DNA of 64,000 nt from Syncephalis fuscata S228. Lineage: Eukaryota; Fungi; Zoopagomycota. The position numbers and the translations under genes were made by a program. The notes under the pieces are model-generated. The model searched no databases and was not told the DNA's origin. It saw nothing but the letters and a program-made list of their open reading frames with translations. This document shows, one piece after another, positions 31,601 through 36,441 of this stretch; position 1 is the stretch's first letter, and the number at the start of each line of letters is the position of its first letter. The stretch is from NCBI GenBank assembly GCA_025786725.1, contig JAHLTZ010000031.1, positions 62,001-126,000 on the forward strand, in the 5' to 3' direction.

Positions 31601-31981
31601 GATGCCAGTCGCTCATAATCGACGAGGCGGGCGAGTCGGGCATTGAGGTTGGCGTGGGTAGGTCGAAGGTGCCATCGCTTCTCATGGTGCTCGAGGTGAT
31701 GACAGAGAGTCGCTTTCTAACCATAGGCGAATCCTGTGTACGATAAAGGGTGGGTGATGGTGGTACCATAAAATTTGATGGTGCATTGTGTGGCAGGCTA
31801 CTATTACTATTGTTATTGCTATTACTATTGCTATGGCCATTGCTTTATTATTGGGTGTATCGTAATACACAGAGATGGCCGAGGGACGACGGCGTTGGTA
31901 TAACAATTCTGGTACATTACCAGCATCCCTCGCGCCTTCTGGACGAGCGACACCGGCATCAGAATGCTTTCGCGCAAACAT
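28663..31981 (-). CDS. Rho-family guanine nucleotide exchange factor (DH-PH) with long disordered N-terminus; apparent 1-nt frameshift near 31843
   Basis: DH domain: ERVKALYNLIATEKKFVRTLQLIRNAFIEPL, IFGGIEQLLPRHEKLLRDLEQR, LLASPKGRIQQY, EDPDY. PH domain: RRLIHQGSL, RIAFLFDDLLVLAK, KKYYLQAENADQHNYWMQ. A last short exon is inferred at 28697-28663; the alternative stop is at 28767 if the last intron is retained. Confidence 0.82.
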
Positions 31982-33348
31982 TATTGGTATACTGTTAGTA
32001 TTATTATAGTAGTAGTAGTACTATTAGTCTAGGTGGCGACAAATAAAGACAAGTGGCAATTTAACAAGTGACAGTATTAGCAGTGGTAGAGTAACGGTAT
32101 TAGTTGTAGTGGTATTGACGAGCGTTTAAAGACGAATATGTAAATTGAAGGTATATCAAATGGACACAGATGGTTTAGAGTGCCAAAGCGTAAACAAGCG
32201 TAAACAACGAAATAAAGAGAAAGAAATGAAGACAACTGTAAGAAACAAACCGATAATCAATATGACTACGGTTACTACAACTAGGTACAGAAAGATGATA
32301 AAGATGTAGAAAAAAGACAACGCCTGTGGACAGGTCGTTGTTTATTGAATTTAGTACGCCTTGACAGGCATTGGCAATCGCATGGCAGGACTGGCCTTGA
32401 TACTGGAGCGCATGCACTCTGCGGCCAAATAGCATGCGTGAGGCAACCGGTTATTGGTTCATGTGCCTTGATATCCACATGCTTTGTTGTACGAGCGTGA
32501 TGTTGTGTATTAACCAAGCAACAATACAGCATTGGCGCATTATTAACTGCATCCAAGGCAGAGAGCAAATGTGAGTAATAAACAGTTGGCAAACAAGCAA
32601 GGTAAACGAATAGTCCATTCATAATCCTGCCTTGTCACTATCATGCAGTAGACCATAATGTGCCCCGCAAGCGATTATCACCGATATTTCCCGGCATATT
32701 ATTTGTTTCTAACTGGTATTAAATGGAGTTAAGGTGCCATTATTAGTGTCATTGTGTGTTCAACATGTGTGTATGGCGACCAATAATGATCAGATAGCAT
32801 GGCAATTCTATCAATGATAGGTATAAATATTAGTAACACTAATGTATAATAATTGTAATAATAACGTATTTAATAATAAAACTATTTTACTATGACTCCC
32901 TAGCTTTAAACTAGAGACAAAAAGATTTATAACTCAAATAATAAACCGTCCATCAGCTTTTGATGCTGAGAATTGCTATTTGTTGAAGCGGCGCTATGTC
33001 AACTCTGATTAATTCAAGTGGAGCTGAATCAGTCTGCACTATTTTCAATATCCGATATTAGCGTTAATAAATGTTAATCCATGTTATTGTTGCTGTAGAG
33101 TATTCAAAGCATTATAGTTTGATATTTAATGTCTCTCACCATCCAGTTCCATGTTTAGTAGAACAACAAATGTGTAGTTCAATCAAGTAAAGATGTCAAT
33201 TTTGATCTTTTGATGCTGAATCCCATGAGTCTACTAATAAATTACTTAATATTAGTGGGCTATTTTACTTTTACTTTCATATTTTTATTTACTCATTCCA
33301 CTTCCTTTTTCTTATTACTATCTTATCGTTTTATATCCTTTTTAGATA

Positions 33349-33500
33349 TTCTATTTTATGGAAATGATAATGGACAATAATATTACGTTAATATTTATTG
33401 TGAATAATCCTTTAAACACAATCCAATTTAATCAAATCATTACGATCGATTGCTTAAAATGATTTATTGCGCTGAATGGGGGAAATCCAGATAATACCAA
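33349..33500 (+). repeat. Second copy of the ~140-150 bp promoter-proximal repeat module
   Basis: Matches 25118-25257 and ends ~78 bp before the ATG at 33578. Confidence 0.7.
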
Positions 33501-33577
33501 TCATTTAATAAAAATATTACCACTTTAATGTCACATTATCTTCGTGTTTTATTTACAAATCTAAAGTCAGAGGAATC

Positions 33578-35964
33578 ATGGATAATAGTGATACAATAGC
33601 TTTTCGTAATTTCCATGAGGTATAGTCAGAGGCGACTTGTTTATTCTTATAATAACTATTACTGACTAATTAGAAGAAACATATAAGAAAGCCTTCTCAC
33701 CAGCACCACTGGCAACAGGAAACAATGATGAATTGGCAAAAGCAATTTGAAGAGAGCGAGAGAATACGCAATGAAATGGAAGTGCAACTTAGGCGCACCA
33801 AACAGCAATGGCAGGCAGAAGTGGCAGAACTACAATTACAGACCAAGCTCTTAAAACAACAAATACTGGAGGAGCGGCATATACGTAAAAAGGAGCGAAT
33901 GCGTGTTGATTCGCGTCTACAGAAACTTGACACGTTAAGTGTTTATGGTAAAGAATAGAAAAGAAAATAGCAACTTTTATCTAACATCACAAAAAGGCCA
34001 TTCAACTATATTTGGTAGAGAAATATCTGCCTCAATGAATGTTTATCAGCGATTAGATATTGATCAACCATTAGCACCAAGTGAGTAATAGTATGGATAT
34101 TAGTTGGTGGGATATAACTATAATCTATTAGATCATGGCGAGTCATCCTATATTCCGTCAGTTGACCCCTATATGGTGGATATTATACAGTTATTTGAAA
34201 AGAAGGTAAGTTATCATAAGTTATGGCGAGCGAATGTTAATTAAATAAATTAGATGAACGATGCTCATGAGGAAATTAAACGACGCGATGAACAAATCGA
34301 CTTATTGACTAGTCAGATAGAAATGCTGCAGAATGAACCACTTGATACTATACAACGTGTGAATTCTAAAGAAAAAGCAATGCCAAGTCAATCTGAACAA
34401 GAGCTCAAAAAGCAAGCTTTATTCTTAAAAGATCAGTTAATATCGTGCGAACAGGTAACTATTAGCTATGATTATTTAACATCCGATTGGTATAACATTG
34501 GTGTAATTAGAATCTGGCATCAATAAGCAATGAGCGAAATATGCTGGCCAAAACAAATGCAATGCTAGAAAAGAAACTTGATAGAACGAAACAACGAGCC
34601 CATCATGATGCAAGCTCATTGGCTACGCAGAAAAACATAACAGAGTAGGTCGATAGAACAATGAAATAGATGCATTGTTTAATAATGTCCCATATTTAGG
34701 GATATACAAAAGTCATTGGTCAATGAGGTCGATCAAACACGAATGAAATTAAAAACAGAACGACAGTAAGTTAACTGTTTATATACAAATCTACAAGTAA
34801 TAAATAATTGTTATTATCATTTAGACGAAATCAACAATTGGAAAAAACGATACAACAACTTTTACAAGAAGTAAATGATACTAAAAAGTAGGTATTTGTA
34901 ATTAATCAAAAGTTTAATTTTAATAGTAATTATCATAACAATATAACCCAGTGATCGTGATAAACTAATGGCTACATTAAAACAATTTCAACAACAATTA
35001 CGTAGTATTGAGATGATGATGAAAGATTTACATGCCGAGCGGGATAATTTACGTAAATTATACAACCAGGTGATTTTAGATAAGTAAATTAAATTTATTA
35101 TAGATTAATAGTTAAATAGACGACCGATCAGCTTAGTCGATTACAAAGAATTCAAGTTAGTGCAATATTTTATATTTACGCTTATTTATTTAAATAGTAT
35201 GAATCTAGTCTTATTCCAGTAAAACAAAACATGACGGCTATAATGATAATCATGGACTACTTTTGCCGTTATCCGACCCGTATGAATCGAAAAAGCAAGA
35301 AACAGCATTAGCAACGTTAGCGACCGAACGAGACCAGTAAGACATAATAAACAAATACCAATCATACTCGTTCTAACATTGCTTTAGGGCATTATTTAAA
35401 ATAGATCGTCAGAAACAAGAAGTGCAAACGACACGACAACACACCCATGAACTGGAAACTTCATTGTTAAAGCTACGACATGAAAACACGCAATTAATGA
35501 GACACGTACAAAAAGTAGACGATAATCTACATTTATTGGTGGGTCAGATTAATGGACATCAGGTACGTTATAGACAACAATTGACCAGTGCTCCAATAAA
35601 AAGCTGATTTAATTATAGCCATCGTATATGATGACTACATCCGAGTGTAAACACTCTATGGACAAACACGGAACGCGTACTTTTGAACAACCGCCTCAGT
35701 TGTTGTATGACGAGAAAAGTCGGCTACGAACAAAGACGATGTCGAAACGCAACGATAATGATACATCGATAGAAGGCGAGTCATTAATCTCATAAAGACA
35801 ATGCATCCATCTATCAGCATACTCATTGAGATGTATTCATAGGCGATATATTAAATTATAATCATCCATTACCGGTACGAGATCGTATGGAAAAAGAGTT
35901 ACGGCAACTACGCGATGATCTCGACAAATTATTACGTGACACGGATATCTATCACTCTACCTGA
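33578..35964 (+). CDS. Coiled-coil protein with CEP135/Bld10/TSGA10-like motifs; shortened, many short exons
   Basis: The spliced reading gives QRLDIDQPLAP, IPSVDPYMVDIIQLFEKK, EIKRRDEQIDLL and DRDKLMATLKQFQQQLRSIEMMMKDLHAERDNLRKLYNQ, in the same order as motifs I recall from animal CEP135. The existence of the gene is well supported by splice signals; the family call is from memory. Confidence 0.6.
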
Positions 35965-36441
35965 AAAATGTATAATTTTATAAATACCCCACTGAGCAAG
36001 ACATTGATGATATAAATAGCTGTCGTATTAAAAGAAGAATGGCTCTGGTGTAACACAATGGTCATCCTTAGGCCTTTGATCGTTCCTGCATGGCAATGCT
36101 GTTTTGTACTCTACCAATATTGAAGCTGATGGCGGCGATACCGTCTCTATTTTCCTATGGCCAACATCCATTCATAGTCCTGCTCTTGCTTCCTCTCTCT
36201 CCTTCTCTCTTTCATTTCTGGTTTGCCCTTTTTTCTTTCTTAGCATAACAGCATTTGTAGCATTGTGCATTCATACTTTGCATTCCAATCGTTGCAACAA
36301 ACAATTATTTTATTGAATGTTCAATTGATTGATTGATCGTGTACTTGATATCAGCATATCTACTGTATATATTCATATACATTGCATTTTTCTACACTTT
36401 GATAGCTAGTTATTGGTGGTGGGGCCTGTACCACACAGCCT

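What the first reader, a model, noticed from the sequence alone, without database searches (positions are those of the whole stretch)
33578..35964. Shortened CEP135/Bld10-like centriole protein in an apparently non-flagellated fungus
The ORF track shows only generic coiled-coil scraps here. Joining the short exons gives four ordered motifs: QRLDIDQPLAP, VDPYMVDIIQLFEKKM, IKRRDEQIDLL and DRDKLMATLKQFQQQLRSIEMMMKDLHAERDNLRKLYNQ. As I recall them, these parallel animal CEP135 (QRMQIDEPVPP, DPYIADLLQVADNRI, IELREREIERL, ERDELQRMLERFEK..IQSNVKLLTAERDKL..LYNE). The protein is roughly half the length of animal CEP135 and lacks a recognisable N-terminal LRKRLDQLGY-type segment. Established: CEP135/Bld10 links the cartwheel to the centriole wall, is absent from Dikarya, and some Zoopagomycota (Basidiobolus, Coemansia) have centriole-like spindle-pole structures. 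Inference: this is a retained, repurposed relic of the centriole-to-spindle-pole-body transition.
Basis: partly seen in the sequence, partly recalled or inferred. Interest (0 to 1): 0.8.

Follow-up and report, generated by a model that had tools for sequence, protein, structure and literature searches.

The report
Possible CEP135 relic in Syncephalis
A real, expressed 14-exon gene in the non-flagellated mould-parasite Syncephalis fuscata encodes a long coiled-coil protein that may be a cut-down relative of the centriole protein CEP135, but I could not test that kinship directly; the same genome does keep the centriole-duplication kinase PLK4 and CEP44.

Summary
The gene is real. Fourteen exons at 33578-35964 (+) encode 557 aa. 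Exons 1-13 equal the public protein BDF19DRAFT_197075 of Syncephalis fuscata (523 aa). A spliced RNA contig confirms introns 2-12 exactly. The last intron (GC..AG) is seen both spliced and retained.

The CEP135 kinship is untested, neither shown nor refuted. Pfam, PDB sequences, three word-index searches, an exhaustive search with exon 5 and a metagenome scan found only the protein itself. No CEP135 or TSGA10 sequence could be brought in by reference, so the animal motifs remain recalled from memory. A language-model feature search put a CEP135 cluster second or third, among unrelated coiled-coil proteins, which is weak.

The context fits a relic. The genome shows no IFT46/57, B9, radial-spoke, SAS-6, STIL, CPAP or CEP76 domains and no delta/epsilon tubulin. 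It does keep PLK4 with its cryptic polo box, CEP44 and CFAP20.

My estimate is about 45% a divergent, N-terminally short CEP135-family scaffold and about 40% an unrelated lineage-specific coiled coil. The scan noted this stretch before only as the same finding (s1-629978), not on other DNA.

The parts
33578..33619 (+). Exon 1 (annotated start codon, 14 codons); not covered by RNA contigs
   Evidence: Model. It is identical to the start of public protein P0001. Depth is 0 over 33494-33590.
33674..33947 (+). Exon 2; first long helix (residues 22-104); alternative in-frame ATG at 33725
   Evidence: the contig starts at 33675; helix.
33997..34080 (+). Exon 3; disordered linker holding the QR..ID.P motif (34047-34079)
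   Evidence: (joint 33946/33996).
34132..34205 (+). Exon 4; SSY and the first DPY motif at the N-cap of helix 2
   Evidence: (joint 34080/34132).
34254..34454 (+). Exon 5; helix 2 and a linker. Used for the exhaustive representative search.
34511..34644 (+). Exon 6 (coiled coil)
34700..34765 (+). Exon 7 (coiled coil)
34825..34887 (+). Exon 8 (coiled coil)
34952..35069 (+). Exon 9; the 39-residue DRD.L ...
35120..35155 (+). Exon 10 (12 codons)
35209..35336 (+). Exon 11; linker with a second DPY motif (35272-35289) at the N-cap of helix 4
35388..35562 (+). Exon 12; helix 4 (residues 388-463)
35619..35775 (+). Exon 13; disordered tail. If intron 13 is retained the frame runs on to a stop at 35795, giving the 523-aa public protein.
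35776..35842 (+). Intron 13, GC..AG, alternatively spliced or retained
   Evidence: One search shows a 67-nt skip (depth 74) that fits the GC..AG cut within its stated 6-nt play. It also shows an unspliced 121-nt contig over 35750-35870 (depth 92).
35843..35964 (+). Exon 14; alternative C-terminal 39-residue helical segment and stop

Best explanation
The locus is a single-copy, expressed gene of Syncephalis fuscata. It encodes a 523- or 557-aa protein, depending on whether the last intron is retained. The protein has four long alpha-helical coiled-coil segments joined by disordered linkers. I think it most likely is a strongly diverged, shortened member of the CEP135/Bld10 family. Such a protein would be a dimeric rod that no longer links a SAS-6 cartwheel to triplet microtubules, because that machinery is missing here. 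It would instead serve as a scaffold at the nucleus-associated microtubule-organising centre (spindle pole body). It may act there with the other retained centriole-linked proteins, PLK4 and CEP44. Shown: the gene structure, expression, the helical-rod architecture, the organism, and the loss/retention pattern of marker domains. Inferred: family membership, dimerisation, location and partners.
For: The gene model and all four motifs are present in order. The model is identical to an annotated protein. Spliced RNA confirms introns 2-12, and intron 13 is seen both spliced and retained. The gene is single copy. AlphaFold gives helices at 22-104, 146-185, 207-369 and 388-463 with disordered linkers; the QR..ID.P-SSY-DPY stretch lies in the first linker and at the N-cap of helix 2, so it is not coiled-coil sequence. 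An ESM-feature search places a 'Centrosomal protein of 135 kDa family' cluster at rank 3 of all clusters and rank 2 of unnamed clusters, score 0.96. The genome keeps PLK4 (kinase, PB1 and PB2, each above the Pfam cut-off), CEP44 (32.4 bits against a cut-off of 27) and CFAP20. Literature precedent: CEP135 family members can be so diverged that direct BLAST fails (C. elegans CCEP-135, PMC9020716; plants, 10.1101/2021.07.25.453666). The spindle pole body of Coemansia, another zoopagomycote, has a nine-microtubule ring of unknown composition (PMC6070874). From memory only, so a lead and not a test: the human CEP135 sequence as I recall it aligns to residues 123-155 and 314-365 in the same order.
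Against: No sequence or profile method gave any hit. This covers Pfam on the exons and on P0001, PDB sequences, which by the literature include CEP135 fragments, and three word-index searches at E up to 10. It also covers phmmer of exon 5 against 1.84 billion representatives and the metagenome loci scan. The feature-space neighbours also include Spindly, CCDC13, CCDC170, CEP128 and CEP89, and the recognition value (2199) is below the tool's 2300 mark, so that hint is not specific. The known CEP135 partners SAS-6 and CPAP, as well as STIL, were not found in the genome. No N-terminal CEP135-like segment was detected. The animal motifs rest on recall by the same kind of model that made the finding.
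Confidence: 0.45

Rival explanations
1. A lineage-specific, fast-evolving coiled-coil protein with no ancestry in CEP135. The motif parallels would be chance, or an artefact of recall. It could still be a structural scaffold (spindle pole, nuclear envelope, septum or vesicle tether), but not a centriole relic.
For: It is the only protein found in 5.8 billion clusters and 1.84 billion representatives by the searches run. There are no Pfam or PDB matches. The composition is Q/E/K/R/L-rich, typical of generic coiled coils. The atlas neighbours are a mix of unrelated coiled-coil families with a sub-threshold recognition value.
Against: The word-index search sees only proteins of 288-915 aa that share exact 5-mers, and the one exhaustive search used a single 67-aa exon. 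The blank is therefore weak evidence of orphan status. The first motif block lies in a non-helical, Pro/Tyr/Asp-containing linker, where spurious coiled-coil similarity is not expected. The genome demonstrably retains other centriole-linked genes.
Confidence: 0.4
2. A diverged member of another known coiled-coil family of the centrosome, kinetochore or spindle pole, for example a CEP57/Ppc89-like, CENP-H-like, CCDC13-like or Spindly-like protein.
For: There are sub-threshold Pfam hits to CENP-H (22.3 bits against 29.9; residues 390-454) and to Cep57_CLD_2 on exon 9 (15.1 bits against 27.1). The top atlas neighbours are Spindly-B and CCDC13.
Against: All of these are below curated cut-offs and cover short helical stretches, which is the usual coiled-coil noise. 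None explains the linker motifs. The lengths and architectures do not fit; for example, the match covers only profile positions 76-140 of the 202-position CENP-H model.
Confidence: 0.1

Closest known systems
CEP135 / Bld10p (centriole cartwheel-to-wall and A-C linker protein)
   Same: It is a long, mostly helical rod built of several coiled-coil segments. Its language-model features are near a CEP135 cluster. It co-occurs with PLK4 and CEP44.
   Different: It is about half the length: 523/557 aa against 1140 aa for human CEP135 (10.1101/2021.07.25.453666). No N-terminal microtubule-binding segment is detectable. The partners SAS-6 and CPAP were not found in the genome. The organism has no flagellum genes. 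No statistically supported sequence match was obtained.
TSGA10 (vertebrate paralogue matching the C-terminal half of CEP135; from my own knowledge)
   Same: It is similar in size and shares the ERD.L-type motif block, as I recall it.
   Different: As I recall it, TSGA10 lacks the upstream QR..ID.P / DPY block that this protein has. TSGA10 is vertebrate-restricted as far as I know. It was not testable here.
C. elegans CCEP-135 (H06I04.1)
   Same: It is a precedent for a CEP135 homologue missed by direct BLAST and recognised only through iterated searches and coiled-coil architecture (PMC9020716).
   Different: The worm has centrioles, cilia, SAS-6 and SAS-4. Syncephalis shows none of these markers.
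Fungal spindle-pole-body coiled-coil scaffolds (S. pombe Ppc89/CEP57-like, Sid4, Pcp1)
   Same: It is a coiled-coil scaffold in a fungus without flagella, and exon 9 gives a weak Cep57_CLD_2 hit.
   Different: There is no match above any cut-off. Published surveys report such yeast components as restricted to yeasts (PMC6559791).

Membership tests
CEP135/Bld10 | Significant, reciprocal sequence or profile similarity to known CEP135/Bld10 orthologues | tested here: inconclusive
   No CEP135 sequence could be obtained by reference. Pfam has no hit. The word-index searches, the exon-5 exhaustive search and the PDB searches returned nothing. These searches were limited by length window, exact words or query size.
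CEP135/Bld10 | Conserved internal motif blocks in family order (QR..ID.P / DPY upstream, ERD.L ... AERD.L..LYN downstream) | not testable with these tools
   The fungal side is confirmed. The family side is known to me only from memory.
CEP135/Bld10 | N-terminal microtubule-binding region (human residues 1-190, two-stranded coiled coil 82-144) | tested here: not met
phmmer of residues 1-135 against all PDB sequences at E up to 10 gave no CEP135 chain. Caveat: exon 1 and any further 5' exons are not covered by RNA.
CEP135/Bld10 | Elongated multi-segment coiled-coil rod | tested here: met
   AlphaFold gives helices at 22-104, 146-185, 207-369 and 388-463, and there is heptad periodicity. This feature is generic and not diagnostic.
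CEP135/Bld10 | Co-occurrence with the binding partners SAS-6 and CPAP/SAS-4 (the ancestral centriole module) | tested here: not met
   No SAS-6_N and no Tcp10_C (G-box) match in the 29.4-Mb assembly. STIL_N is also absent. The scans work exon by exon, so absence is probable but not proven.
CEP135/Bld10 | Localisation to the proximal centriole, or here to the spindle pole | not testable with these tools
   This needs microscopy.
   IFT57 gave only a weak sub-threshold match, apparently coiled-coil noise. IFT46, B9-C2 and Radial_spoke gave none. The eight tubulin loci read as 4 alpha, 3 beta and 1 gamma. The species name is from NCBI.

The most novel reading that the evidence does not exclude
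Syncephalis, a zoopagomycote without flagella, has lost the cartwheel and triplet-microtubule machinery: SAS-6, STIL, CPAP and delta/epsilon tubulin. It still runs a remnant of the centriole duplication and centriole-to-centrosome module at its spindle pole body. That remnant would consist of PLK4 with an intact cryptic polo box, CEP44, this CEP135-like rod, and perhaps an SPD-2/CEP192-like tandem-ASH protein. These would be the first molecular components proposed for the 'degenerate centriole' seen by electron microscopy in zygomycete spindle pole bodies.
Probability: 0.3. Interest if true: 0.8.

Novelty: new variant of a known kind. Interest (0 to 1): 0.58.

Why it matters
How the fungal spindle pole body arose from a centriolar centrosome is an open question. 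Published gene surveys compared only Dikarya with one chytrid and concluded that centriole-assembly proteins are absent from non-chytrid fungi (PMC6559791, source data read). Electron microscopy shows a nine-microtubule ring of unknown composition in the Coemansia spindle pole body (PMC6070874). If this protein is a CEP135 relic, then together with the PLK4 and CEP44 genes verified here it gives concrete, taggable candidates for that intermediate structure. If it is not, it is one more orphan coiled-coil gene. In that case the interesting part of the story moves to PLK4 and CEP44, which stand on Pfam evidence.

Tried and rejected
1. Pfam on ten exon pieces and on P0001 gave only sub-threshold coiled-coil noise.

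2. PDB sequence searches with the whole protein and three parts gave no CEP135 chain.

It found only P0001. That gave me a reference for the protein but used the only job, so the whole protein was never searched exhaustively.

4. Three word-index searches (whole protein, 100-360, 300-365; E up to 10) found only the protein itself. One call failed on a parameter limit.

5. The metagenome loci scan found nothing.

7. The joined 557-aa model was built only inside scripts and sent to no search tool. Exon 14 was searched only by reference, in Pfam.

8. Supplements of a BLD10 paper held only plant coding sequences. The alignments I looked for were figure files not held as text (e.g. S4 Fig of PMC9020716, a TIF), so no CEP135 residues could be read from the literature.

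9. I tried to verify the TBC1D31 note. The locus I examined (C24:99-100 kb) is an ordinary small TBC gene, so TBC1D31 remains unverified.

10. I first thought the two CFAP20 copies differed by introns. The alignment shows near-identical redundant contigs that differ by four 1-nt indels.

11. I did not run a fold search on the model, because long single helices give meaningless structural matches.

Full report
WHAT IS THERE

The window is AT-rich (about 37.5% G+C) and dense in short introns. Reading the three forward frames across 33500-36050 and joining them at canonical splice sites gives 14 exons. The 13 introns are 48-67 nt long. All are GT..AG except the last (35776-35842), which is GC..AG. 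The open frame is 1674 nt, or 557 aa.

An exhaustive phmmer search with exon 5, given by reference, returned one protein out of 1.84 billion representatives: P0001, 523 aa, 100% identical. P0001 equals my exons 1-13 and then reads into intron 13 to a stop. NCBI names it 'hypothetical protein BDF19DRAFT_197075 [Syncephalis fuscata]'. That also identifies the organism and agrees with earlier notes of this scan.

The gene is single copy in the 29.4-Mb assembly.

EXPRESSION AND SPLICING

One public run (X1) holds 55% of the sampled words of the genomic stretch. I read that share as about what spliced RNA would give.
- Its 1513-nt contig lies on exons 2 to 13, with eleven skips at exactly the modelled borders of introns 2-12, all GT..AG.
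- A twelfth skip of 67 nt fits the GC..AG intron 13 within its stated 6-nt play.
- An unspliced 121-nt contig crosses the same intron.

The gene is therefore transcribed. Introns 2-12 are proven, and the last intron is alternatively removed. Its removal gives a 557-aa form with a helical 39-residue tail. Its retention gives the 523-aa public form.

The contig stops at the 5' border of exon 2, and nothing covers exon 1. The N-terminus is therefore unverified. An in-frame ATG at 33725 is an alternative start.

THE OBSERVATION

AlphaFold run on the single sequence gives four long helices (22-104, 146-185, 207-369, 388-463) separated by low-confidence linkers.
- The QR..ID.P-SSY-DPY stretch sits in the first linker and at the N-cap of helix 2, so it is not coiled-coil sequence.
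- A second DPY caps helix 4.
- The 39-residue block is exon 9, inside the longest helix.

THE FAMILY ASSIGNMENT

Here the tools failed me, and I say so plainly.
- Pfam gives only sub-threshold noise.
- phmmer against all PDB sequences, with the whole protein and with residues 1-135, 100-235 and 290-420, finds no CEP135 chain.
- Three word-index searches at E up to 10 find only the protein itself. These see only proteins of 288-915 aa that share exact 5-mers, so human-sized CEP135 is outside their reach.
The whole protein was never searched exhaustively.
- A metagenome scan found nothing.
I left it out.

No CEP135 or TSGA10 sequence entered the session. My own recollection of human CEP135 agrees with them, and would make two collinear blocks of roughly 30-35 bits each. 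But it comes from the same kind of source, so it is a lead and not a test.

The only independent hint is the ESM-feature search. A 'Centrosomal protein of 135 kDa family' cluster ranks third overall and second among unnamed clusters at 0.96. It sits beside Spindly, CCDC13, CCDC170, CEP128 and CEP89, and the recognition value is below the tool's reliability mark.

THE ORGANISM AND ITS CENTRIOLE GENES

Exon-wise Pfam scans of the whole assembly found no match for:
- SAS-6_N, the CPAP G-box, STIL_N, CEP76-C2 and the ALMS motif;
- IFT46, B9-C2 and Radial_spoke.

IFT57 gave only a weak sub-threshold match, which I read as coiled-coil noise. The eight tubulin loci read as four alpha, three beta and one gamma, with no delta or epsilon. 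This fits a fungus without flagella and without a cartwheel or triplet machinery. The caveat is that short exons lower sensitivity.

The same method does find the following:
- PLK4, at contig C179. The kinase domain scores 105 bits. PB1 lies in two exons of 32 bits each (64 bits read through), and PB2 scores 61 bits. All are above their cut-offs.
- CEP44, at 32.4 bits against a cut-off of 27.
- CFAP20. From my own knowledge it also survives in plants without cilia, so it proves little.
- A protein with at least three tandem ASH-type Ig domains that gives sub-threshold Cep192_D2/D3/D4 and ASH hits. This is only a lead.

LITERATURE

Reviews tie loss of centrioles to loss of SAS-6, SAS-4 and BLD10/CEP135 (PMC3144413). 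The survey usually cited for fungi compared four Dikarya with one chytrid and no zygomycete (PMC6559791, table read). The spindle pole body of Coemansia reversa carries a ring with nine microtubules whose composition is unknown (PMC6070874).

CEP135 homologues can be extremely diverged. The C. elegans one needed iterated PSI-BLAST (PMC9020716). For plants, 'conserved residues are rare' (10.1101/2021.07.25.453666).

Recent structures place the CEP135 N-terminal part in the A-C linker with WRAP73, TBC1D31 and POC1 (PMC12506977). Fly Cep135 residues 250-352 bind Ana1/CEP295 (PMC13422256).

I found no paper in the held library that reports centriole proteins in Zoopagomycota.

MECHANISM, WITH ODDS

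I put about 45% on a diverged, shortened CEP135-family rod. Its cartwheel and wall partners would be lost, and it would now serve as a dimeric scaffold at the spindle pole body, possibly with PLK4 and CEP44. The gene, its RNA, the rod architecture and the gene-content pattern are shown. Family membership, dimerisation, location and partners are inferred.

I put about 40% on an unrelated lineage-specific coiled coil, and about 10% on another coiled-coil family.

Two family features were tested and not met: the N-terminal segment and co-occurrence with SAS-6/CPAP. I therefore do not file it as a CEP135 member. I call it a CEP135-like candidate.

VERDICT

The decisive test is a profile comparison with real CEP135/TSGA10 sequences, and it remains to be done.

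Whatever that test shows, PLK4 with its cryptic polo box and CEP44, in a zoopagomycote that lacks SAS-6, STIL and CPAP, are worth a follow-up of their own.

Noticed in passing
L013 = G000:C179:102138-105446 (kinase ORF 472-858; PB1 1354-1902; PB2 1874-2371 in locus coordinates): A PLK4 gene with kinase domain, Plk4_PB1 and Plk4_PB2 (the cryptic polo box), all above Pfam cut-offs. It sits in a genome where SAS-6, STIL and CPAP domains were not found. What the kinase does without its known substrates is unexplained.
   Followed up: partly
L015 = G000:C306:206448-209618 (ORF 1312-2049): A CEP44 domain scores 32.4 bits against a cut-off of 27. This is a second centriole-lumen protein retained in this fungus.
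   Followed up: partly
L028 = G000:C350:303769-307041 (ORFs 28-699, 690-1316, 1357-1911): A protein with at least three tandem ASH-type Ig-like domains gives sub-threshold hits to Cep192_D2, D3 and D4, ASH and HYDIN/CFAP65 Ig domains. It is a possible SPD-2/CEP192-like protein, which would be the natural partner of the PLK4 polo box. This is not established.
   Followed up: partly
L017 (G000:C19:1-2689) against L018 (G000:C24:509197-512523); also L051 (C114) against L050 (C24): The assembly holds redundant contigs. The CFAP20 gene on C19 and on C24 is near-identical apart from four 1-nt indels that break the frame on C24. A TBC gene is likewise duplicated on C114 and C24. These are probably haplotigs or unpolished duplicates, so copy numbers in this genome should be read with care.
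   Followed up: partly
window 35776-35842: A GC..AG intron is both spliced and retained in the RNA contigs. This gives two C-termini, and the public annotation has only the retained form.
   Followed up: yes
window 31770-33577: There is an unusually long (1.8 kb) stretch without convincing ORFs between the upstream minus-strand gene and exon 1. The RNA contig ends exactly at the exon 2 acceptor, so further 5' exons cannot be excluded.
   Followed up: no
G000 tubulin loci L001-L012: The tubulin complement reads as four alpha (two in tandem on C113), three beta and one gamma, with no delta or epsilon tubulin.
   Followed up: partly
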